From the NCBI GenBank assembly GCA_037834085.1, contig JBBMKC010230520.1, forward strand, positions 1 through 32,838: 32,838 nucleotides of DNA. The letters are read 5' to 3'. The DNA is from Bipalium vagum (Eukaryota). The position numbers were made by a program, and so were the translations under genes. Under the pieces are notes generated by a model. That model ran no database searches. It was given only the letters and a program-made list of their open reading frames with translations, and was not told the DNA's origin. Of this stretch, positions 3,288 to 31,847 are shown one piece after another (the stretch's first letter is position 1; every line of letters begins with the position of its first letter).

Positions 3288-6200
3288 ATGAATAAAGAAT
3301 TAGAGGTTGAATATCTGAAAGACCAAGGTATGATATTATTTAAATTTATATAACATTAATAAATATTCAGTAAGCCGTTTGAATGAAGCCTTGTCTCATT
3401 ATCAGAAAATTTATATTGATAATTCTGAAGTATTATTTTTTCAGTTAAAAATAGATCTTATTTTGATTTTTAGACACCTGTCTCTAATAAAAATCATATA
3501 ATAAATAACGAGTTAATTTAAAGTTTTAGTGGTTAATTTATTTATATTTTAGTTATTTATGTCCACTTCTTTTGGAATATGACAAAGTAATTCACGAATT
3601 GACAGTAGAAATCGAGTCTACAAAAGTAAGCTTAATAGTATCTAAAAGTTCTTATAACTCAGGACATTGTTTGAATATTGGTATTAATCTTTTGAATCAT
3701 ATATTTTCGTTCAACCAGAATGCAACCAATGTTGATAAATTCTATTCACAAAAATTGATGCAATTTTTCATATTTTGGTTCTCTCTTTTCTGCCTATAAA
3801 ATGCATACAAACTACATTTATTGAACCAGTTATATTTTAAAAATAATTTTAATGAAACGTCCATTCCCATTTATATTTTAAAGCAATAAATTGTCTTGGT
3901 TTTAAAATGATTTTCAAAATCTGCGAAAGGATAGGTTTTGAAATGAATAAGTAATCTAAATAAAACTAGATTTCTAAAATTATAATGTCTCATTTTAAAA
4001 AATCTTATTTTAAATTCAGATTTTCTAAAAATACTTGTGATAAAGTATTATGTAATGTTAATAGAAATTTGAAAGGCGATGATCGAATTATTCTTAAATT
4101 CTTTTCATACTTATTTTGAAAATGGAATTTGTTTCTCTCATTTCAAGCTGTAAATTACGGTGTTTTGGTTTTTAAATAGTTTTTAGTTGGTCGTCATAGA
4201 ATTAATGGAACGTTTTTTTATTTTCTGCTTTCGATAATATTTTTGAATCTCTTAAAAATAATTCCAATATTTTCCTTTAATACCTTAAATAATTATGTCC
4301 ATGTCTTAATTTTATCATGCCAAAATACATGATTCTACTAAAACTTATTAGATTCGACTAGAAGCAATAAGGTAGACTCAATTACATTTTGATTATCAAA
4401 TAAAACTCAGACCTAAGTTGCATGTTTAATCTTTACAAATCAAAGTTTTATTATATGTGTTTAGGAATATTTTAATGAAAAAATTTACTTCGTAGATTGT
4501 CTAGAATAATCTATTCTGTACTTATTACAAGAACTATAGTATAATTAGAATTGACGAAACATTTGTTGAAATCAACTTTTAATGCATCTTTGCATTTAAT
4601 ATAAAGTATCTGGCACAACAGTTTTACAAGAATTCTCATTTAGAAAAACTCACTTTAAATTCTTTTAGTGGGAAAATAAGGGTTCAAGGACATCTCTTTC
4701 ATAATTATCGCATTTACTTAAAAATTAAGACCAAATACATTCACACCATATAAATATTGGTTTCATTGGGAAAATTCTTTCAGTATTAAGTATCGTAATA
4801 GAAATCTTTTCGAAAATTTTCGGATTCTCAATCACTGGTTGAAGTAGAATCTTACATATATATCTTTCGATGTATATTTTGATACTTAAATAGTTTTAAC
4901 TTGGTTTTTATAAAAAATGATAAGATGTCTCACATATAGTTATAAAGGATTTACTTGAACGGGCTTCTTTGCCATATATCTAGTACATGTTTAGTAGTTT
5001 CCAGATTCCTTTATACAATAATATATAATATAATAAAAATATATAATAAAAATCTGATTATATTACAAGATTTAACATTGTGAAAAGAATATATTAGAAC
5101 TGTTCTTTTATAGTGGAAATAAGAGATATTATATTATTTAAAAAATCTTGCTTTCATAATCTCAATATTTCTGATTAAGTCAAAGTATTATTTATATTTA
5201 TATAATTATATTAATTATATATTAATATATATTATATTATATCATATATTATATTAATTAATTATATTTTTAAACTGATACATGGATGTGGTTAGGTAAA
5301 TTATTTTTCAATATTTCTTAAAATACTAAAAATATTTATTATTTTGGTTAAATAATTCAAAAAATATTTAATATTGATAATGATAATTATTATTACCGTC
5401 CCATTTTAATTCAAATTTAATTTTATGATTAAACATTATTTAACATATGCAGAAGCTATTTAAATTGGAGAAATATTTTTATATCAAAAAATGAAATTAA
5501 GCGATTATTTCTAACCGCTTAAAAAATTTTTTGCTTAAAACTAACTTTTCTTGAAAGAGTTTTAAAAATTTTTTTTCTTTTGAAGGAGACATTTTTAGAA
5601 ATTTTTCAAATCAGAATATTTATACTTTCTTTTTCGTTTTTTATAATGAATTTTCTTATATTCCCAGCAAAGCTTAGAAAAAGAACGAATAAAAGTAGAG
5701 GCTATTATTAATGAAAATGAGCAGTTAAAGTTACAGAGCTTACCAAGAAATGTAACCATTTCTGTGAATGATGAAATAAAACAAGTCGCTCAGAATCAAA
5801 TTGATTTGATGACAAAGGTTGATTAAAGTGCTAATATGACATCATTGTAAAAACAATTGTCAACAGGAAAAATGTTATTTGGAAGAATTGTTGAGGCTTT
5901 CCGAAGTTGAGGTGGAAAGATTGCAAGCTGAAGTGACCGAATATCGTTTGAAACCGGAAACAGTTTTGTTTAATGAACAAATCGAATCAATGAGACAACA
6001 ATATTTGAATTCAATTCATCAGATGGAAGAGGAAGTCATGACATTGCGCAATATTAGAAAAGATCTAAGTAACGATTTGGAAAAGTCGCAAACTCAATTG
6101 AGAGAGGTCGAAAAAGACAATATAATGTTGAATGAGAAATTAAGATTTGAAAAGCAAGCCGGAGAAGAAAATCTCAGTCTAATAAAAACTGGTTTAAGCC

Positions 6201-7865
6201 GCATTGAAATTCAAGATAGAGAAAAAAAAGAACTATCGGTAAAATGATAAATTTACCTAATGAAATCTAACTTGATATTTTGTAGGCACAAATTGAAGAA
6301 CTCAGAGCAGTTATCAAAGCACATGAATCGACCAAAAGTGAATGGGGTACAAGTTTGGAGAATTTGGAGGCCAAATACAAAGAAAAAGAGCAACAGTTAT
6401 ATGATGCTACCAGAAAGATCAACGAAGCTTACCAAATGGCCGAGACAGCTCTGGGAGAAAAAAAATCTATTGAAATTAAAGAAATGCAATATTTAGGAGA
6501 ATGTGAACGACTGCGAGGTGTAATTTCTGGAATCTTGGAAGACGCAGGCATCAGAACAAGAGAAGAAGTAGATTTGGTGAGGAATAATTATGAAAAAGAA
6601 ATCGAGAGACTTATGAATGAATTGAGTTTCTGTGAACAGGTTTGGTTGGTTTAATATGCTTGAATGGTAAAAATTTTGTGATTATTTAGAACAGACAAGA
6701 ATTACTAGTGGATATTGACAGAATGAAGCGCAGTAAGAGCCAATTGGAGCAAGAAATAGAATTACTTCACAGATCTGATACTGAAAGGACCATGCAAGTC
6801 CAGTCTTCAGAAGAGGTGATTCATAATCGAGTGGTTCAGGCTGAAAGGGAGCGTGAAGACACTCGATTATCATTGATTTCTGCGGAGAATAACTTCACCA
6901 AAGAAAAAACAGAATGGCAAGCACAAAAAACAGCCTTAGAAAACGAGGTTTGAGAATAATTTCTTTTTGAGAAGTTTTTACTGATATAAAATCTTTCCCG
7001 AAAATGAATAATTTTTTTCGAGGACTAAGAACATGATTTATACAAATATTTGTTACTAAATCGAATCCATTTTCTTCTCTAGATCAATTATATGCAGAAA
7101 AAGTTAGCCAGTCTTCAGATCTCATGTGACAAAGCTCAATCAAATGCTGATCGATTCAGCAAAATGTTATCTGCGTCGGAAGAAATGGCAGAGAAGAATC
7201 GTAAAAAGTATCAGGACTCTTTGAAAAACAGTCGACACGAATTTGAAATTTTCAAACAATCATCCAAAATCAGACAACAAGAATTGGAGGCACGGCTTTT
7301 GTCAACCGAAGAAGCACAGCGTCAAATGACTTCGGAAATGCGACAATTTCTGGCCAAGCAACAGCAGGTATGACACTGACTTGGGTTTTCCGCTACTATT
7401 TCATCGGTTTTGTTCAATTACAGATCAGCAACAAATGGAGGGAAGAAGCACACAATATCACCAATCAATACGAGGAAAAACTGACCCAGTTATCGAGAGA
7501 AGTTGACCGTCAGAAAAAAAGGAACGATGAAATGGTTTTGCTTTTGAATGAGTCCAAACAACACTTATTGGAAGTAAAAGATCATTATTGTAATCACCTT
7601 TAATCGATTTAAAGAGTGAAGAGACAATAGAAGACCAAAGGAAAGCAATAGCGTTAATGGATCGAAGACTGAATATCATTGGAGACTCAAATTCCATGAA
7701 ATTGCAGGTGATCATTGATATGATTTTTTTGTCACTTGAACAACTACTCTAAAACAATAAAATTGATCTCAGATCGATTCTACAGATCAAGACGATTCCA
7801 ATTGGCAGTTGATGCAAGCGAAAAAGCAACAACAACGACTCATCAAGGAATCCGTTGCCAGGTAG
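3288..7865 (+). CDS. SCLT1: Sodium channel and clathrin linker 1 homologue (centriolar distal appendage coiled-coil protein), 12 exons, ~654 aa
   Basis: Phase-consistent GT-AG exon chain: 3288-3327, 3371-3429, 3474-3511, 3553-3625, 5668-5817, 5867-6238, 6286-6639, 6690-6947, 7083-7367, 7424-7573, 7615-7707, 7773-7865 (1965 nt). Colinear motif matches to vertebrate SCLT1 as I recall it: EVEYLKDQVSRLNEALSHYQ ~ EIDFLREQNRRLNEDFRRYQ; YLCPLLLEYDKVIHEL ~ FLAPLVTEYDKHLGEL; DAGIRTREEV ~ DATIRTKKEV; EMRQFLAKQQQISNKWREEA ~ ELRHLLATQQKAANRWKEET. The last exon is ambiguous (see findings). Confidence 0.88.
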
Positions 7866-22537: not shown

Positions 22538-25500
22538 TTAAGTCATGGCTCTGTTGCGGGGATTAGCTCCATACTTTCCAATAATTGATCCGTCTTCATT
22601 GAAATTTGCTGAAATAAAAAAAAACCCATTGAAGCTCATTTACCAAAGCGACACAGTCTCAAATCTCACAACATAAAACTACGTTTTTCATATTTTGACA
22701 GATTATTGATTTATGATTAATAAGCCAATAATTGTGCCACAATAATAGAAATATAAAGTTATTCGTTCTATAGCGTTATTAGTCTAAAATTGAGATTGAT
22801 TCAATCTCTAATATCTTATAAGAAATATTGTGTACTAAGTTAATAATTACTAAAGCAATTAATCAATAATAAAAATGAATAACTGGATAATGTACACGTT
22901 ATATTTTTATTTTATTTAAATTAATTAAAAAAAAAGAAGAAGAATTAGAATTAATAATAGCAATAAGTATTAGTAATAATAAGAATTTATAAATTAATAA
23001 TAAGAATTAAAAATGAATAATAGTAATAATAATAGTGATAATAATAATAATAATAATAGTGATAATAATAGTAATAATAATAGTAATAATAATAGTAATA
23101 ATAATAGTAATTCATTTATAATAATAATTAATAAGAAGAATCACAATCCAAGTATTTCTTATTTTTATTATTATTATTATTTATTATTATTATTATTTAT
23201 TAATAATTTTTTGAAAACAGAATTTCAATATAAAGTAAAATTTTGGTAATGTTGACGAATCTTTACCAAAAACCCTTAATGTCAACTGAGAGGAGAAATT
23301 TGAATTAGAATTTTAGGAATTGATCAATAATTTCCACTGACCAATCAGATCTGAACATTTTAAACGAATCTACTCACATGGATCTAAATCATAAACATCC
23401 AATTCTCCGTCATCACCACTACCCACACTATGGCCGGAGATTGATAATTTTCTTTCTTCCGTAAGGTTGGACATGATTTCCAGCTCATGTTCTCTAAAAT
23501 CGAATAAATTCGAGAAAGATGACAGAAAATTAACTCTTACTCTCTTTCATATGGCTTAAATATTTCATCCTGGACTTCTTTTTCGGGATCATATCCATGT
23601 TGTCTTTCAATTTTGTCCACTGAAACAAAGATGAGAAAAATGCAACCAGTTCCATCAACTTACATTGATACGTTTCTCCTTTGTTACGCATGCAATATCG
23701 AGCGAGCAAAATGATCATAATTAGAAGAATAAGTAATACCAAAATAACGGCAATAATCCAGTACACATAAGCCATATCTAAATATTTATAATAATCAGAC
23801 TTATGCGGATATTCATATTTTTATTATTTATGATAATTTCTTTTAACAAGACCTTCCAAATCTTCGATATTTTTATCCTTCATTAAAACATAATTTTATA
23901 TTAAATATTCCAATGAAAATATGAAAGATTTTCCTGATGGATAATTATTTCAATGGTAAAAGAGCTTCCAAATTAGTTTGAGTATAATAATTATTATTAT
24001 AATAATTATTAACTTGTAATAATAATAATAATTAGTATAACTCATTTGGAAACTCTATCAAAGTCATTCGGTGAAATTTCTTTACTGGATTACTTAATTT
24101 ATCAATTTTATACAAAGAGACATAAACTGGACAATTATGACCAACTGATTAAAGAGATAATTGATTATTTTGATAATGGTAATCGTTAATTAAAAATGGA
24201 GATTAATCGTTCGAAACCTTCTTGATTCACGTCTTTTGTTCGTAACTAAATAAAGAAACAAACCACTAAGTGGTCTTGCTTTATGTTTTGCACAAGTTCT
24301 CGAATCATGATCAATAAAAAATATACCGAAATCAAATGATCTTTTGTTTAAATGGGAATTGTAATTAATCAAAAACATGCCAAGAAATTCTTTCAATTCT
24401 ACAATCGACTACTTTACCCTTTTTCTGCTTAAAATCTTCATTTGTTTGAACTTATTATGATTTTGAAAGGTAAACAGATATGAAAATAATTTATTTTATG
24501 TTGAAAGAACCAAGACTATAAAAAGTTTTTTGATTTTGAGAAAAAAGGAAAAAGATCCCTAAATCCTGTTATGAAGACTAATTGATAATATTTAACAATT
24601 TTTTAAAAATACTTTAAAAAAGTAATAAATTTTTTCAAATTACAATATATAAAAATTAAAAAACTAATCAATAATTATATAATATTATCGATTTTTAATT
24701 TGACATTTTCTAAATCTATTTGAACGTATTGTGTCACTTTTTAATATAGAATATTTAGATTTTACGACTCTGAAATGTACATTATATTTTACATTTTTTC
24801 CTACATTACCAAATTTCTAAATTATATTATTAAAAAATTATTGTTATTATTATTATCTAAAAAATTATAATATTAAACATTAAATAATATGTATTTATTA
24901 TCGTAAATTATAAGAGATATAAACTAATTTTTATATAAATAAATAAAAATGAAACTTAATTTGTTTCCAACGATTTCTCCTAATTATTAAAATTAATTAA
25001 TTAATTAATTATTAAATTATTATTAAGAACAATAAAGCACATAAGCAGTTCTCTGTATTCATTTCTAACTTACTAATTGGTTTATAATCAATTGTTATTT
25101 TTGCTTTTAACATATTTCCAAGAGTCATATCATTTCTCGAATAATATATGAACCTCGGTACCGAGTCTGTATGACCTATCAAATCAAGATTGCATTGAAT
25201 GAAATTGTTTCCCAAGGCCACACGAACAGATTCGTCCCTTTTTGTATTGTTCGAACTAATTGGTAATAATGTCAAATCTTTCTGAAATGGAAAAATAAGC
25301 AATTATTCTCACCAGAACGTTTTAATTTCACAGATATCTAACATTAAAAAAAAATTAATTACAGTAATCGGATCGACTTGAAAATAAGGAGCAAACTGAT
25401 TGTCCAGCGAATCTTTTTGTTCCAAACGGTGGCTGTTGATGGTCCAGTAGTGATCTATTGTCAATTCTTTGTGTAAATATTCATCAGTTTTGATTCTACA

Positions 25501-28500
25501 CTGAAAATAATGATGATCCGAACTGCGGCATTCGGCCGTGCAGTTTTTCGTTTCTGGTGAAACCAAGATAAGATTTTTAAGCCTGGGGACTGTGTAAATG
25601 GACGTGCTTTTTACGTTCATACCATAATCATTTTTAGCCATAAACATAAATGAATGATCTTGATAAATAGTTTGCCCAATTGTTTTACGGAGATTGTATA
25701 CGGAGTATGTTGCAATCTCAGTGTTTGCGTTTTTGCTCGTAGTAGACGTGAAGTTTAGTTCACTTAAATATGGATACGACAATTGGAGACTATTTTGTGA
25801 TAACTTTAATGGACTATTGAATGGAATTACTTGCTTATTGATTTTCATGATCTGAATAAACAGCTTTCATTAATTATTGACCATGAGTCTTACGTATTAT
25901 TATTATTATTAATAACGCAAACGTTACAGTTGAGTTTTCCATAGTTTATTTATCATTGTGACTTTAAAATTCTATAACTGTATTATATCTGGCGCAAATG
26001 TTAAAATTGGAGTTCATAAGTTTATGGAAGTAACTTATGTCATCGATTATAAACTAAACAGATTATTGAAAAAATCTTTTTCAAGTTTTTCATTTAGAGC
26101 AATATAAGAAAAAGTAAACCAATCATTTTCATAATGATTTAAAAATAAAAATCTTTTTATTAATTTTTAAAAAAATTAAACATTAAATAAACAGTTTATA
26201 TTACTGTCATGAAATTTCCTTTTATTAGGTCGTCTAAAAATAGATATAACATATAAAAAGATTAATATTCATGTCATTAGAGAACTCAAAGTCACTTGAT
26301 ATTTTCCAACTGGCAGGAAATACAATGTGACAAAGTAGTCTCATTATTGATAATAATGTGTGACCAAAAAGATATAACTTCTACAAAATACCAAGTGCCA
26401 TTCCTAAATGTTGCACCCTGAATGATTTCTTTTTCTTCATTAGCGAATGAACAACCATTTTGCACAAACCTTGCTTATTCCCAAGTAATCATAGATAATT
26501 TACTGCAAAGTACCATGAGGACAACCAATAAATTCCTCGATCTCATCAAAGGTTTTTCGTCGGTCGTCCTTCAATAGATAATGCACACGAACAATAAATC
26601 AATCTGAAATTGATGTTATTGATGCATCACCTCGTGTATTATCATCAAGTGATTCCTTTCTGAAACAAGCGCGTTATCCATATGCTGACTGTGGATCTAG
26701 AAGCTGCACTTTCTTCGAAATGTAGCTTTAGTTTATCAGCAGCTCTGATTGTACACTATTGTTCGTAAAAAAACTTACCCATCACTAAAATGATATGACA
26801 GAACAAATGTTTCTAGCTACGTTATACTCCAATACCTAAAAGTGTCATACGCAACACAAACATTAAACAACTTGAGCTATTCAGGAGCTATGTTGATTTT
26901 ATTAACAGCTACAAATTCTATAAAATGATCACTCCTCTACAGGATTTTAGGTACATCCATCATATTTCAATTCCTAAGTTGCGTTTTCAATAATTTTGGA
27001 GTTTCATGAAATAACTAATGACATGAAATACAAGGAAATCAATTAACTATAATTGAATTATATATATTTGTTAGACTAAGTTTGTTTTAATATTTAATAA
27101 TTAGTTTTTGAAGTCAGAATTGTTTATTATGTTTCAATTAAAACAAGATTTAACTGGCGACCACACCGAAAATCTTAATTTAATTATGAAACATTAAATG
27201 CTTTGTCAAAGAAGGCACAAGAATTGTTGTCGTTTCAAATGCGCAAATTCAATGAGGCCGAGAAATGGCTAAGAGAAATCGAAGATTGGCTGCACATCAA
27301 TGAACTTTGCTTGGTCGGTGTTTTTAATCTGTTATTTACGGATGAAGCCGTTATTTTTGTAGAAAATTTTAAATCAGAAGTTACGACAGTACCCGATGTT
27401 AAACAATGTTTCCTAGATACCGTCAGTAAGCGCGGACAACGAATTTTTTGATTGGAGATTCAGTGTTGGCAAGGTGAAACCACACCACAATTGAAAAATA
27501 TTTGCATCCTAAAGATCTGACAACCAAGGTGAGACAATTGTGGAGAAATAGAGATTTGTCAGTTACCATAAAAGAAAAAATTATCTATTTATTATTTTGT
27601 CAATATTTACATTACTTAAGTGAATATGAAAGATTTTGTATCAATTTGAATGTTATGACTGCGGTTTATACGGCAAGATAGTTTATATTATACATAGTTT
27701 AAATCTGAATAAAATAATTTGTTTCTCTCAAACAATTTAATATTAAGCGAGTTTTCAAACCAAATCTTCTTGAAAATCATAAACATATTGAAAATTGGGA
27801 GTTAAAATAATTTGAAATTTTAATAAAAATGGCATCAATATTAAAGATAATTTTACTATTTCTGTTGGTTCACCGCTGTAAATACAAGTGAAATCTGCAC
27901 CTTCAAATTCCCAAACATGGCGAATTAGAGGTAAGCAGTTTCTTGAAGGAATAGGAGGCCCAATTACTTTAACATTTATTTTCATATCAATTTGGTCTTT
28001 ATTGTCTGCTACAGCAAGATTGTACATCCCCTCCATGTCTGAGGTAATGTCTCCGATAAAATTAACTTTATATTTGTCTATGGTTCTGAAGGCTCCGTTA
28101 TTCAAAGGTTGAGTTTTAAAATACCAAGTGGCTTGAGCTACTCGAGGAGCAGCATATAAACAATAAATAGCTACATGTGGAAATAATTCCGCGGTTTTTG
28201 TCTAAAATTCAGCTCAATAAGTTTGATGTCATTAATTTTTAATATGTATACCTTTCTACTGAATATGTTAACATTTTGTTCTAGTTTTGATATAGCCTTT
28301 ATTTTTCCAGTATATTCAGACTGGAAGCCATTGAATATCACTCCACTTTCAATGTCAATTCCCGAATATCGCTTAACATACGTACTGATAGGAACTGCAA
28401 GATTATTTTTCTTTGTATAACACATAAGAGCATATGATAGTTCAGGATCATGAGATTCTTCTTTAATATGAAATATATTTAAGTCTCCATCGCTATTGAC

Positions 28501-29577
28501 AAAATAATTCCAATTGTCCATTTCTTTCAGTTCCCTTGGTCGTAGAGTTTGATCGTCCTCTTTCCATTTTACAGTGGTAAAATCAGTACATTTTTTAAAT
28601 GACATTTTTTCAGTGGCTTTCAATGGTTGTTTGGAAATTTTTACCGGGCACACCACCCAGCTTACAGGACTGGAAAATTCTTGATTGATCCAAGAGGGTT
28701 TCGATGGGTTCAACTTCAGATTACTTTGAGTACATTTAAATGTCCGTGGTAAAGAACTTCTGGTAACATCTTCTACATCTTGGATTCGAGAATCGTCATT
28801 AGACATTACTAAATCTTTAGAAAGATAAATATTTGTGTTATTACTCAACTTCTATGCTTACTTTGTTCCCAAAAAACTGTATCTCTAATCTGAATATTAT
28901 TCGACCTGATATCAAAGTTTCCTCTAGAATCAGAGGCTTCACAGTAATAGTTACCGGACGAATCTATACCATTGTCTGTGAAAGTAAAAGTTACTTTCAT
29001 ACCTTTTAGAATTAAATTTTAAAAATGGGTTTCATTAAATATTCCGTGTTACCTTTTAACCCAGGGGTATTTGTATCAGCTTCTATTTTACCAAAATCGT
29101 GAGCTACAGGTTGTGGGTGTTCACCATCATTTAAAGTGACAAGACACTTATCTTCCTGATGTAAAATTTACTTAACAAAATATTTCTCAGGCTGAAAATA
29201 AGTTTACCCTGCAGAATTTGTATGAAATAACACTATGTGGATTGTAACCAGAAATAAAACAAAATATGGATATGGAATTTGAGTATCCAAGCATATTTCT
29301 AATTATTACAATTTCTTCACCAAAAGACATATCTAATTGTGGACCACCTGTGGTCAGTTTTAAAGAAATCACTGTTTCCAAATTATTACTAAAACCCGAA
29401 GCACTCCACCTGATAGTATTCATAAGACCTGAGATATAACATAAATCACTTTTAAAGGTTCAAAAAAATTACGAAAATTTATGCAAAAAAATATCAGAAA
29501 TTTGATCATAATTTTTATAAATTCTTATTACCGGAAATCTGATATGAAATCAAAATTATTTTATGATTACTAGCCAT
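22538..29577 (-). CDS. L1CAM/neuroglian/SAX-7-family Ig cell-adhesion molecule, atypical (5 Ig, no FnIII, TM, L1-type cytoplasmic tail), ~830 aa; first exon uncertain
   Basis: Phase-consistent exon chain on the - strand: (29577-29532 tentative), 29428-29208, 29155-29053, 29002-28862, 28814-28252, 28201-27857, 25851-25363, 25281-25074, 23777-23664, 23619-23541, 23493-23378, 22608-22538. Ig motifs: SIFCFISG...SGNYYCEAS; DGDLNIFHI; IYCLY...TWYF; FTCIYSGEP...AKNDYG; FQCRI...HYWTIN...IQC. TM segment WIIAVILVLLILLIMIILLA. Tail RNKGETYQLDKIERQHGYDPEKEVQDEIFKPYE...GSGDDGELDVYDLDPSNFNEDGSIIGKYGANPRNRAMT* follows the L1-family pattern KGGKY..., SDDSL.DY, FNEDGSFIGQY. Confidence 0.85.
23017..23205. repeat. 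Compound (AAT/AGT)n microsatellite followed by an opposite-orientation (TAT)n run, in the last intron of the L1-like gene
   Basis: Directly visible; it explains the spurious poly-Asn/poly-Tyr/Leu ORF at 23013-23249. Confidence 0.9.
23961..24056. repeat. ~96-bp foldback or tiny MITE
   Basis: AGAGCTTCCAAAT (23961-23973) / ATTTGGAAACTCT (24044-24056) pair at 12 of 13 positions; there is an inner TGAGT/ACTCA pair around an ATT/AAT core. Confidence 0.55.
24060..24420 (-). mobile_element. Probable piggyBac-like transposase N-terminal remnant
   Basis: VELKEFLGMFL...ESRRFRTINLHF...SLYKI resembles the piggyBac motifs El.aFlGl, MSR.RF..I...LHF and D.LYK. Confidence 0.5.
26268..27027 (-). mobile_element. 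Internally deleted mariner with intact TIRs, in an intron of the L1-like gene
   Basis: Perfect inverted repeat TTCATGTCATTAG (26268-26280) / CTAATGACATGAA (27015-27027). The interior encodes AASRSTVSIW...RVHYLLKDDRRKTFDEIEEFIGCPHGTLQ*IIYDYLGISKVCAKW (mariner HTH up to the WVP motif); the catalytic domain is absent. Confidence 0.75.
27155..27560 (+). mobile_element. Possible Ty3/Gypsy LTR-retrotransposon fragment (PBS plus gag N-terminus)
   Basis: TGGCGACC at 27155 is PBS-like, about 50 nt before an ORF containing EAEKWLREIEDWLHINEL...LLFTDEAV, which resembles the gag capsid W..E motif. No pol or clear LTR pair is visible. Confidence 0.4.
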
Positions 29578-30137: not shown

Positions 30138-31435
30138 CAGTTCCCGCTAAAAGTCTTCGGTCACCATGTAAAAAAGCCTAGTTTATCTTTTAGTTATTTA
30201 TTTTTTTATTGATACATTTTGATTAATGAGTTAATAATATTTTGTAGAGAAATCTAAATATGCCAAGTAAGGAATTATTGCCAGAAAAACGGGCACAAAT
30301 CATTGACCTACATGAAATAGGATTATCAAATCGTGATATTTCTATTCAACTCCAAATTCAGCGTTCTACTGTTAGATATACCTTGCAGAGGGATGTCTGT
30401 CATCACGGTACTACTGACCGCTTTCACTCACTGCAACGATCTGGAAGACCTCGTGTGACAAGCAAGCAGACAGACAGAGTCATCCGCCGATCAGTTGTAA
30501 TCGATCCTACTACTACAGCATCTTATATACAATCATCCCTCTTGCAAATTCCACATGCTCCTAGTGTTCGTACCATTCAACGTCGCTTGCAGTATGAAAG
30601 TGGACTAAAATGCTGTCGAACTTCCAAAAAACCATTTTTATCTCCTAAAAATATTAGTGATCGCTTATGATTTGCTAAAGCTCATACCCACTGGAGAGTA
30701 GATGAATGGCAAAAGGTGCAGTTCAGCAACGAAACAATGATATCTCAGTTCAACAGCTACTGTCAGCATGTTGGTCGACCTGTTGGACAGAGATACAATC
30801 CCAAATATGTGGTTACAACTGTCAAAAATTCTCCTAAGGGCATGGTTTGGGGAAGCATATCTGCAGCAGGGTGTGGAGGCTTTCATATTGTCCCACAAAA
30901 TGAAACCATGAAAGCTGACAACTATTTACAATTGTTACAAGATATACTACCGCAAAGGATGATGGCGCACAAAACAAGTGTATTTCAACAGAATAGGGGT
31001 CCGTGTCATCGTGCGAAGAAGGTTATGCGGTGTTTTGATACCAAATCCTTTGATGTTCTATCACCATAGCCTGGTTCTTCTCCCGATCTAAACCCTATAG
31101 AAAATGTTTGGGTCTTACTTAAGAAAAAAGTGGCAAGCAAACACCCAACTTTATTGGTACAACTAAAAGAAGCAATCAGGCAAGTATGAACACTTGAGAT
31201 AACAACAGAATATTGTAGAACACTGATTGATTCCATACCCAATCGCATCCAAACTGTCATTTCAGCCCGTGGACATTATATAAATTATTAAAATATAATT
31301 ATAAATGTTCTTGTGAACTTATTTCTAATGTTGTTAACGTTCTTTACATTTGTACAATAAATATTAATGAATAGAATCATATAAATGCTTTTTTCTAGAA
31401 TTTTAAGAGTGGCCAAAGAATTTTGGCGGGTATTG
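30138..31435 (+). mobile_element. Full-length Tc1-like transposon (1298 bp), inactive
   Basis: TA TSDs at 30136-37 and 31436-37. Imperfect 27-bp TIRs: CAGTTCCCGCTAAAAGTCTTCGGTCAC and (reverse complement) CAATACCCGCCAAAATTCTTTGGCCAC. Confidence 0.93.
30260..31291 (+). pseudogene. Tc1 transposase pseudogene (343 codons, three in-frame stops, no frameshift)
   Basis: Single frame: RSGRPR, KKPFLS, VQFSNE, MVWGSIS, FQQNRGPCH, *PGSSPDLNPIENVW. Stops at 30668-70, 31067-69 and ~31187-89. Confidence 0.9.
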
Positions 31436-31590
31436 TAGATAAAAATCTTATCTGAGAAAGAAATTGGAATCTTCAATTTTTTAGATTTTTTTCATCTGTG
31501 AACTTTTATCCCTCAAGTGATTATCAAGATTAAAAAATAAGTGAAAATCTGTTATCCAGTAATTTTTTAAAAATTATGAAGTTAAAGTTA

Positions 31591-31591
<1 letters not shown>

Positions 31592-31663
<72 letters not shown>
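31592..31663. repeat. (AAT)24 perfect microsatellite
   Basis: 72 nt of uninterrupted AAT. Confidence 0.97.
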
Positions 31664-31665
<2 letters not shown>

Positions 31666-31847
31666 ACATTAATTAATAATGTGAAAAATTAATTTTGAAT
31701 GAATACATCGAACTAATAATAATAACAACAATGGGAGTAATGATAATAATGAATATTAATTAATTATTAAATGGATATACAGAAGTCTCGGAGTCGAGGC
31801 TTTGATGTGTTGGGTTTTTTGTAAATGGAAAATTAATAATTGAGAGG

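What the first reader, a model, noticed from the sequence alone, without database searches (positions are those of the whole stretch)
23664..29428. L1CAM-family receptor with no FnIII repeats: five Ig domains spliced straight to the TM exon
Seen: the exon ending Ig5 plus a ~45-aa stalk (25281-25074, phase 1) joins in frame to the TM exon (23777, phase 1). The 1296-nt intron between them holds AT-rich sequence, a foldback and a piggyBac-like remnant; it is too small for Ig6 plus five FnIII domains and shows no FnIII-like reading frame. Known: canonical L1/neuroglian/SAX-7 proteins have 6 Ig plus about 5 FnIII domains (~1250 aa); lepidopteran hemolin is a secreted 4-Ig relative. Inference: this is a membrane-bound, shortened L1 paralogue that keeps a cytoskeleton-coupling tail. 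It could be a lineage-specific adhesion or recognition receptor class with a shorter membrane-to-membrane span.
Basis: partly seen in the sequence, partly recalled or inferred. Interest (0 to 1): 0.8.

Follow-up and report, generated by a model that had tools for sequence, protein, structure and literature searches.

The report
Flatworm Ig receptor with L1-type tail
This gene appears to encode a cell-surface protein with about five antibody-like (Ig) domains joined straight to the membrane anchor, without the fibronectin spacer domains of L1/neuroglian adhesion molecules, yet with their cytoskeleton-docking tail; it belongs to a small, so far undescribed gene family in this AT-rich (reportedly planarian) genome.

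Summary
On the minus strand, 11 exons (29428 to 22538) join through ten GT-AG introns into one open frame of 816 codons. The exon 25281-25074 and the TM exon 23777-23664 are both phase 1, and the intron between them is 1296 nt, as reported.

The absence of FnIII is not an artefact:
- An independent contig of the DNA run spans this intron without a difference.
- Three paralogues in the same genome join the same two exons across only about 50-190 nt, and a fourth across about 800 nt of AT-rich filler.
- Intronless relatives (692-756 aa) run from signal peptide through the ectodomain into the TM as one open frame. The window's exons match them in the same order.
- Pfam finds no fn3 anywhere.

The tail is L1-like (RNKGETYQ after the membrane, FNEDGSIIGKY at the end). 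Only the last exon touches Pfam Bravo_FIGEY, at 19.6 bits against a cut-off of 23.8. The ectodomain is Ig-like, with five units most likely, but shows no specific similarity to L1.

Not confirmed: the piggyBac remnant, a meaningful foldback, the signal-peptide exon, and expression (no RNA run exists).

Verdict: a real gene, a new variant of a known kind, of moderate interest.

The parts
29208..29428 (-). Exon e1 (enters in phase 1, leaves in phase 0): N-terminal part of Ig-like domain 1, including the B-strand Cys (SISIFCFISGY). The signal-peptide exon upstream was not found.
   Evidence: AG/GT sites and frame. It is 50% identical to paralogue C199542 and matches L037, L038 and L036. In L037, e1-e2-e3 form one continuous ORF.
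29053..29155 (-). Exon e2: middle of domain 1 (EDKCLVTLNDGEHP...).
   Evidence: Frame and splice sites. Conserved as an exon in C199542 and L038, and fused in frame in L037.
28862..29002 (-). Exon e3: end of domain 1, with the F-strand motif GNYYCEAS.
   Evidence: Weak Pfam Ig_2 match, E 0.11. Paralogue matches of 47-57% identity. Placed at HMM positions 149-176 of the intronless family.
28252..28814 (-). Exon e4 (187 codons): a large Ig-like domain 2 (Cys27, Trp41, Cys131 invariant; an extra Cys55/Cys75 pair) plus the first strand of domain 3.
   Evidence: Alignment A1 of 10 homologues, with conservation ending at the donor site. AlphaFold mean pLDDT 68.7 and pTM 0.68, one beta-sandwich over residues 2-165. 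All VIA and Foldseek matches are single Ig domains; the top one is hemolin residues 98-208 at Z 6.6, tied with many others.
27857..28201 (-). Exon e5: Ig-like domain 3 (IYC..W..GMYNLAVADN) and the start of domain 4 (ADFTCIYSGEPTEI).
   Evidence: The profile A4 hits the Ig domains of titin, CEACAM1, Otk and DCC in the PDB, E 9e-5 to 0.02. Placed at HMM positions 346-413, E 2.5e-4.
25363..25851 (-). Exon e6: the rest of domain 4 (YPYLSELNF...FMFMAKNDYG) and the first half of the four-Cys domain 5 (NCTAECRSSDHHYFQCRI...HYWTIN).
   Evidence: E 1.8e-15 against the HMM of intronless relatives, positions 445-588. hhalign against the domain-5 profile A7 gives probability 95%, E 2.4e-8. The matching part of P0009 (residues 299-519) models as tandem Ig domains, with VEGFR-3 D4-5 at Z 9.0 over 186 aligned residues.
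25074..25281 (-). Exon e7 (leaves in phase 1): end of domain 5 (NFIQCNLDL) and a conserved stalk of about 23 aa (GNMLKAKITIDYKPI).
   Evidence: Splice sites. 62%, 44% and 28% identical to three paralogues. Aligns in order with the end of domain 5 and the stalk of intronless relatives, E 0.0038 but probability only 8.8%.
23778..25073 (-). Intron of 1296 nt between e7 and the TM exon: AT-rich, with no FnIII-like frame and no recognisable transposon.
   Evidence: Spanned without a difference by an independent contig.
23664..23777 (-). TM exon (phase 1 in and out): membrane helix YVYWIIAVILVLLILLIMIILLA followed by RYCMRNKGETYQ just inside the membrane.
   Evidence: Sequence. About 47-50% identical to the TM exon of C104079. 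From memory, this resembles the KRSKGGKYSV segment of L1.
23541..23619 (-). Tail exon t1: (L)DKIERQHGYDPEKEVQDEIFKPYER.
   Evidence: 81-83% identical to C104079, pN/pS 0.10.
23378..23493 (-). Tail exon t2: EHELEIMSNLTEERKLSISGHSVGSGDDGELDVYDLDP.
   Evidence: Residues 25-38 align with residues 28-41 of the Bravo_FIGEY sequence on C90077. Paralogues on C104079, C141091 and C253699.
22538..22608 (-). Last exon t3: (S)NFNEDGSIIGKYGANPRNRAMT and the stop codon. This is a FIGQY-type ankyrin-binding motif.
   Evidence: Pfam PF13882 Bravo_FIGEY is the only hit, E 0.0022, 19.6 bits against a cut-off of 23.8. 9 of 11 residues identical to the C90077 motif. pN/pS 0.11.

Best explanation
What it is: an intact single-copy gene for a type-I membrane protein of the immunoglobulin superfamily.
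- At least 816 codons lie in 11 exons. The signal-peptide exon is still missing.
- The ectodomain is about 690 aa and holds most likely five divergent Ig-like domains.
- A conserved stalk of about 23 aa follows, then one TM helix, then a cytoplasmic tail of about 100 aa.
- The tail resembles the L1/neuroglian tail along most of its length that could be compared and ends in FNEDGSIIGKY.
- There are no FnIII domains. The last Ig-like domain leads straight to the membrane.

Family: it belongs to a lineage-restricted family with two branches. One has introns and keeps the FIGQY-type tail (at least four loci). The other is intronless and has shorter or degenerate tails.

Inferred mechanism (not shown): the Ig domains bind a partner on another cell or surface. 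The tail recruits ankyrin and spectrin through the FIGQY-type motif, perhaps switched by tyrosine phosphorylation as in L1. The result would be an L1-like link between adhesion and the cytoskeleton, held on a much shorter ectodomain.
For: - Gene model: ten GT-AG introns, consistent phases and no internal stop.
- Selection: all exons are under purifying selection against old paralogues (pN/pS 0.10-0.48, synonymous sites saturated), strongest in tail exons t1 and t3.
- The e7-to-TM join recurs in C104079 (intron about 190 nt), C195002 (about 50-70 nt) and C210537 (about 800 nt of low-complexity AT).
- Intronless relatives C210837, C219201, C233644 and P0009 carry the ectodomain, stalk and TM in one open frame. 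C233644 is a 344-aa C-terminal fragment. Signal peptides are seen in C210837, C219201 and P0009.
- The window's exons map onto these relatives in the same order.
- e1-e2-e3 are fused in frame in a homologue from another sample.
- Ig fold: e5 profile against PDB Ig domains, AlphaFold of e4, P0009 residues 299-519 as tandem Ig, and the ESM Atlas, where all ten nearest clusters are IgSF surface proteins and the top score is 0.97.
- No fn3 or any other significant Pfam domain in any exon or continuous relative.
- Tail: Bravo_FIGEY is the only Pfam hit of the last exon, and t2 and t3 match a bona fide Bravo_FIGEY sequence in order.
- Contiguity of the DNA.
Against: - No RNA evidence: no RNA run holds the locus.
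- No signal-peptide exon was found.
- The Bravo_FIGEY score is below Pfam's cut-off, and t1 and t2 alone give no Pfam hit.
- The ectodomain has no L1-specific similarity, and Pfam Ig models barely see it.
- The structure evidence is moderate. For e4 only one of five models is good. The P0009 model has mean pLDDT 40. Domain 5 and the horseshoe arrangement are unresolved.
- Ankyrin binding is inferred from the motif alone, and here Phe and Gln of FIGQY are replaced by Ile and Lys.
Confidence: 0.7

Rival explanations
1. The family is not a shortened L1. It would be a lineage-specific IgSF receptor family that acquired an L1-type TM and tail module by exon shuffling, or whose tail resembles L1 only through short convergent motifs.
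For: - The ectodomain has no detectable L1 affinity. phmmer with e4 finds no L1, Pfam is blank, and there are five units rather than six.
- Only about 15 residues reach Bravo_FIGEY.
- Genuine strong Bravo_FIGEY sequences exist elsewhere in the assembly, on C90077 and C3091, as possible donors or as the true L1 orthologues.
Against: - The resemblance runs in order over three tail exons: the segment just inside the membrane, the acidic DxYDxDP stretch and FNEDGSxIGxY.
- A degenerate version (SFHEGSMVGEY at the C-terminus) is present in the intronless branch too. This puts the tail in the common ancestor of the whole family.
Confidence: 0.25
2. The FnIII-less structure is an artefact. FnIII exons were missed, the assembly is collapsed, or the Ig exons and the TM/tail exons belong to two different genes.
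For: The assembly is very fragmented (272,664 contigs). No transcript data exist.
Against: - An independent contig spans the intron with no difference, at single-copy depth.
- The intron has no open frame of the right kind.
- Three paralogues have introns of only about 50-190 nt at the same join.
- Intronless relatives show the same order in one ORF.
Confidence: 0.04
3. The gene is a silent or decaying copy that is no longer expressed, so it has no present function.
For: - No RNA evidence and no identified first exon.
- A Tc1/mariner remnant lies just upstream.
- Some family members carry stops: C201148 has a TAA, and C134366 has a TGA where C210837 has Trp.
Against: All 11 exons are open with canonical splice sites. 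Non-synonymous change is well below saturated synonymous change in every exon.
Confidence: 0.1

Closest known systems
L1 family of IgCAMs (L1CAM, CHL1, NrCAM, neurofascin; Drosophila neuroglian; C. elegans SAX-7/LAD-1)
   Same: Type-I membrane IgSF protein. The cytoplasmic tail is of similar length (about 100 aa). It has a basic K-G-x-x-Y segment just inside the membrane, an acidic DxYDxDP stretch and a C-terminal FNEDGSxIGxY motif. That motif matches the FIGEY end of Pfam Bravo_FIGEY.
   Different: L1 proteins have six Ig and five FN domains (PMC3406286, read). Here there are about five Ig-like units and no FnIII. The Ig domains are too divergent to be recognised as L1-type. Bravo_FIGEY scores below its cut-off. 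The motif reads IIGKY, not FIGQY.
Hemolin (lepidopteran secreted four-Ig relative of L1)
   Same: A relative of L1 that lacks FnIII. Hemolin residues 98-208 are the nominal top structural match of exon e4 (Z 6.6, tied with many Ig domains).
   Different: Hemolin is described as a protein of four Ig-like domains (PMC3406286). That it is secreted, without TM or tail, I take from memory. This protein is membrane-anchored, keeps the tail and has about five domains. No sequence similarity to hemolin was detected.
Ig-only type-I adhesion receptors (Kirre/IRRE, fasciclin-3, nectins, CEACAM)
   Same: Several Ig domains lead directly to a TM. These are the nearest clusters by protein-language-model features for the relative P0009. 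CEACAM1 is among the PDB hits of the e5 profile.
   Different: As far as I know, none of them carries an L1/FIGQY-type tail. There is no sequence-level family match.

Membership tests
L1 family (L1CAM/neuroglian) | Three to five FnIII domains between the Ig domains and the membrane | tested here: not met
   No fn3 hit in any exon at E<=10, and none in three continuous relatives at E<=1 or in P0009 at E<=10. e7 joins the TM exon directly, and paralogues have introns of about 50-190 nt there.
L1 family (L1CAM/neuroglian) | Six Ig domains, of which Ig1-4 form a horseshoe | tested here: inconclusive
   Five Ig-like units are most likely. The horseshoe could not be assessed. The joined protein was not folded, under the operators' rule, and the P0009 model has mean pLDDT 40.
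L1 family (L1CAM/neuroglian) | Conserved cytoplasmic domain (Pfam PF13882 Bravo_FIGEY at or above 23.8 bits) | tested here: inconclusive
   The last exon alone scores 19.6 bits, E 0.0022, and this is its only hit. t1 and t2 alone have no hit. t2 and t3 align in order with a 64.8-bit Bravo_FIGEY sequence of the same assembly. The joined tail was not scanned.
L1 family (L1CAM/neuroglian) | FIGQY-type ankyrin-binding motif near the C-terminus | tested here: met
   FNEDGSIIGKY in exon t3. It is conserved in C104079 (FNEDGSIIGKY) and in C141091 and C253699 (FNEEGSFIGQY). pN/pS is 0.11.
L1 family (L1CAM/neuroglian) | Binding of ankyrin by the tail | not testable with these tools
   This needs a binding assay.
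Immunoglobulin superfamily | Ig-like beta-sandwich domains with the B-strand Cys, C-strand Trp and F-strand Y/x-C pattern | tested here: met
   e5 profile against titin, CEACAM1 and DCC Ig domains, E 9e-5 to 0.02. The e4 model matches only Ig domains. P0009 residues 299-519 model as tandem Ig, Z 9.0. The Atlas score is 0.97 to Ig clusters. The fold of domain 5 rests on the motif only.
Hemolin | Four Ig domains (PMC3406286); secreted, without a membrane anchor (from memory) | tested here: not met
   A 23-residue hydrophobic helix and a 100-aa tail follow the ectodomain.

The most novel reading that the evidence does not exclude
A flatworm-restricted receptor family would be a 'minimal L1'. An ancestral L1-type gene lost the whole FnIII stalk but kept the ankyrin-coupling tail. 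It then diversified into spliced paralogues and into intronless copies, possibly retrocopies, which would act as fossil cDNAs of the FnIII-less message. This would give cell contacts with a much shorter span between membranes but with L1-like anchoring to the cytoskeleton.
Probability: 0.4. Interest if true: 0.65.

Novelty: new variant of a known kind. Interest (0 to 1): 0.55.

Why it matters
In every described L1-family member, the Ig region that binds partners sits on an FnIII stalk. That stalk helps set the reach of the molecule and serves as a site of cis-interactions and of cleavage.

A natural family that keeps the L1-type tail but puts Ig domains directly on the membrane would show two things. 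The tail module can work, or at least persist under selection, without the stalk. It would also offer a natural test of how ectodomain length matters for L1-type adhesion.

It also adds an undescribed, fast-evolving IgSF family to the surface repertoire of flatworms. This is relevant to studies of neural wiring and regeneration in planarians, if the organism is confirmed.

Tried and rejected
- Pfam, exon by exon: essentially blank.
- RNA evidence: no RNA run holds the locus. Only one DNA run does, and it may be the source of the assembly.
- phmmer with exon e4 against 1.8 billion representatives: 8 hits in all. Five are clear relatives of exon size (about 200-260 aa); the other three are weak, including one 1681-aa weevil protein. 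No full-length protein of this family was found.
- Word-index searches with a 741-aa intronless relative and with the family alignment: one homologue only, P0009.
- PDB profile searches with e4, e6 and domain 5: nothing useful.
- AlphaFold of P0009 with six sequences: mean pLDDT 40. Only residues about 323-510 are usable.
- A mixed alignment of exon fragments with full-length relatives (A5) stretched the fragments wrongly. I did not use it for folding.
- My first count by eye of six Ig domains: dropped after the e4 model.
- Search for a signal-peptide exon by homology and by an ATG, hydrophobicity and donor scan: no convincing candidate.
- piggyBac remnant and foldback in the intron: not supported.
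- The joined (spliced) protein was not given to any search or folding tool. I used exon-wise searches and naturally continuous homologues instead.
- The small contigs C90077 and C3091 read like invertebrate neuroglian tails, and I did not pursue them.
Full report
**Gene model**

The region lies in a very AT-rich animal genome (440 Mb in 272,664 contigs). Earlier notes of this scan call it a planarian. I did not verify that.

I read the minus strand and checked every junction. This gives 11 exons:
- e1 29428-29208
- e2 29155-29053
- e3 29002-28862
- e4 28814-28252
- e5 28201-27857
- e6 25851-25363
- e7 25281-25074
- TM 23777-23664
- t1 23619-23541
- t2 23493-23378
- t3 22608-22538, including the stop codon

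All ten introns are GT-AG. Seven are 44-81 nt long and three are 769, 1296 and 2005 nt. The phases fit throughout, and the frame is open for 816 codons.

e1 enters in phase 1 and has no start codon or signal peptide, so at least one 5' exon is missing. I could not find it, either by homology with paralogues or by a scan for an ATG, a hydrophobic stretch and a donor site.

**Is the absence of FnIII real?** Four independent lines say yes.

1. The intron has only short, AT-rich open stretches without a Pfam match. At 1296 nt it is too short to hold five FnIII domains.

2. A 3,933-nt contig assembled independently by Logan from DNA run X1 covers 23450-27110 without a difference. Depth is about 20-30 over all exons. 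The run may be the assembly's own source, so this tests assembly and not biology.

3. The same join recurs in paralogues of the same genome.
   - On C104079, e6', e7', the TM exon and three tail exons follow each other, with only about 190 nt between e7' and the TM exon.
   - On C195002 the gap is about 50-70 nt.
   - On the more distant C210537 it is about 800 nt of low-complexity AT.
   - Between these old paralogues, synonymous sites are saturated. Non-synonymous change is much lower (pN/pS 0.10-0.48), and lowest in tail exons t1 and t3.

4. The genome also holds intronless relatives. C210837 has an open frame of 692 aa, C219201 one of 741 aa, and C233644 a 344-aa C-terminal fragment. C134366 is interrupted by one TGA. 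The one public homologue is P0009, 756 aa, from an ENA metagenome assembly.
   - In C210837, C219201 and P0009, the signal peptide, an ectodomain of about 650 aa, the stalk and the TM lie in one reading frame. C233644 shows only the C-terminal part: the last two domains, stalk, TM and tail.
   - An HMM of these relatives places the window's exons in order: e3 at 149-176, e4 at 187-244 by the C199542 copy (the window's own e4 scores only E 0.14, at 218-237), e5 at 346-413 (E 2.5e-4), e6 at 445-588 (E 1.8e-15), e7 at 635-660 and TM at 681-699.
   - hhalign links their last domain to e6 (probability 95%, E 2.4e-8) and, weakly but in order, to e7.
   - In a homologue from another sample (L037), e1-e2-e3 are fused in frame. 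This confirms those three junctions.
   - If the intronless genes are retrocopies, they are in effect old cDNAs of a message without FnIII. That is my inference.
   - No fn3 match appears in any exon or in any continuous relative.

**What the ectodomain is**

It is extremely divergent.
- Pfam sees only traces of Ig_2.
- phmmer with e4 against 1.8 billion representatives finds 8 proteins. Five are clear relatives of exon size (about 200-260 aa), from Logan, ENA and JGI contigs. The other three are weak hits, one of them a 1681-aa weevil protein.

Even so, the Ig nature is supported.
- The e5 profile hits Ig domains of titin, CEACAM1, Otk and DCC in the PDB (E 9e-5 to 0.02).
- AlphaFold of e4 with a 10-sequence alignment gives one beta-sandwich over residues 2-165 (mean pLDDT 68.7, pTM 0.68, but only one of the five models is good). 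It matches only single Ig domains. Hemolin residues 98-208 are nominally first at Z 6.6, tied with many others.
- The usable part of the P0009 model, residues 299-519, corresponds to e5-e6. It matches tandem Ig pairs, with VEGFR-3 D4-5 at Z 9.0 over 186 aligned residues, and also contactin, NCAM2 and Robo.
- In the ESM Atlas, the ten nearest clusters to P0009 are all IgSF surface proteins, with a top score of 0.97.

The count is most likely five units: two large ones of about 150-160 aa and three of about 115-125 aa.

Domain 5 has four conserved Cys and the Cys, Trp, Cys spacing of an Ig domain, but its fold was not resolved. Whether domains 1-4 form an L1-type horseshoe is unknown.

**The tail**

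After the helix YVYWIIAVILVLLILLIMIILLA come these pieces:
- RYCMRNKGETYQ, then a split-codon Leu
- t1: DKIERQHGYDPEKEVQDEIFKPYER, then a split-codon Glu
- t2: EHELEIMSNLTEERKLSISGHSVGSGDDGELDVYDLDP, then a split-codon Ser
- t3: NFNEDGSIIGKYGANPRNRAMT

On its own, the last exon hits only Pfam Bravo_FIGEY (E 0.0022, 19.6 bits, cut-off 23.8).

The same assembly holds two tiny contigs, C90077 and C3091, with strong Bravo_FIGEY matches of 64.8 and 43.7 bits. They read like invertebrate neuroglian tails. t2 and t3 align to adjacent segments of the C90077 sequence, in order.

P0009 ends in ...DDSFHEGSMVGEYRTNEV, a degenerate form of the same motif. So the tail seems ancestral to the whole family.

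The resemblance of RNKGETYQ to the KRSKGGKYSV segment of L1, and the roles of these motifs (ERM and AP-2 near the membrane, ankyrin at FIGQY), come from my memory of the L1 literature. They are not tests.

**Comparison with the known**

[quoted passage not shown] That hemolin is secreted is from memory.

This protein meets the TM and FIGQY-motif criteria. It fails the FnIII criterion. It is inconclusive for the six-Ig horseshoe and for the Pfam tail threshold. So it works like an L1-type link between adhesion and the cytoskeleton, by inference, but I cannot file it as a member of the L1 family. Descent from L1 by loss of the stalk and capture of an L1 tail by a lineage-specific Ig family both remain open.

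Full-text searches found no paper describing an L1-type tail on an ectodomain without FnIII in flatworms.

**Limits**

- No RNA run exists for this organism in the index, so splicing and expression are inferred.
- All searches were exon by exon, or on naturally continuous homologues.
There is no Pfam hit, the stretch is single-copy, and the inverted repeats are only weak and AT-rich.

**Verdict**

The finding is real and its architecture is well supported. It is a new variant of a known kind and of moderate interest.

Noticed in passing
window 30260-31069 (+): Remnant of a Tc1/mariner transposase just upstream of exon e1 (Pfam HTH_Tnp_Tc3_2 E 1.2e-11, HTH_SB). It lies where the missing 5' exon or promoter would be expected.
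   Followed up: partly
window 26300-27450 (intron e5-e6, both strands): Several open fragments of 30-80 aa that by eye resemble the N-terminal helix-turn-helix part of a mariner-type transposase. Pfam gives no hit for three of them.
   Followed up: partly
window 5879-7373 (+): Three ORFs of 93-122 aa rich in coiled-coil sequence (E/K/Q/L heptads). They are probably exons of a separate gene on the plus strand.
   Followed up: no
G000:C90077 (L003, 259 bp) and G000:C3091 (L004, 448 bp): Tiny contigs of about 40% GC that encode strong Bravo_FIGEY tails (64.8 and 43.7 bits) without introns. They resemble arthropod neuroglian (DSM(L/A)EYGDIDxGKFN(E/K)DGSFIGQY). They could be the canonical L1 orthologues of this animal, or contamination from prey. 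They are not human-like.
   Followed up: partly
G000:C253699 (L041) 8620-4449 and 1733-539, minus strand: Exons of a T-box gene (LWESFDRLNTEMIVTKSGR..., YIPRIHIVLL...) lie directly upstream, on the same strand, of two L1-type tail exons (…GSDDGELDLYEIDP / GKFNEEGSFIGQY). No TM exon lies between them. C141091 carries a near-copy of the tail exons.
   Followed up: partly
G000:C134366 (L046) 4065-4067: This intronless family member is interrupted by a single TGA where C210837 has TGG (Trp). It could be a pseudogene, an allele or a sequencing error.
   Followed up: no
L039 (JGI metagenome 3300031718), L047 and a sister contig (ENA ERZ27257134 and ERZ27256860), L037/L038 (Logan SRR33002330): The only public relatives of this family come from environmental assemblies and from one other sequencing run, none with annotation. 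Related animals are evidently being sampled in metagenomes without being recognised.
   Followed up: partly
window 22990-23140 and 31580-31690: Long (TAA/ATT)n microsatellites. Similar AT-rich low-complexity tracts, with much higher depth, cause the spurious 'joints' when the DNA contigs are laid on the region.
   Followed up: no
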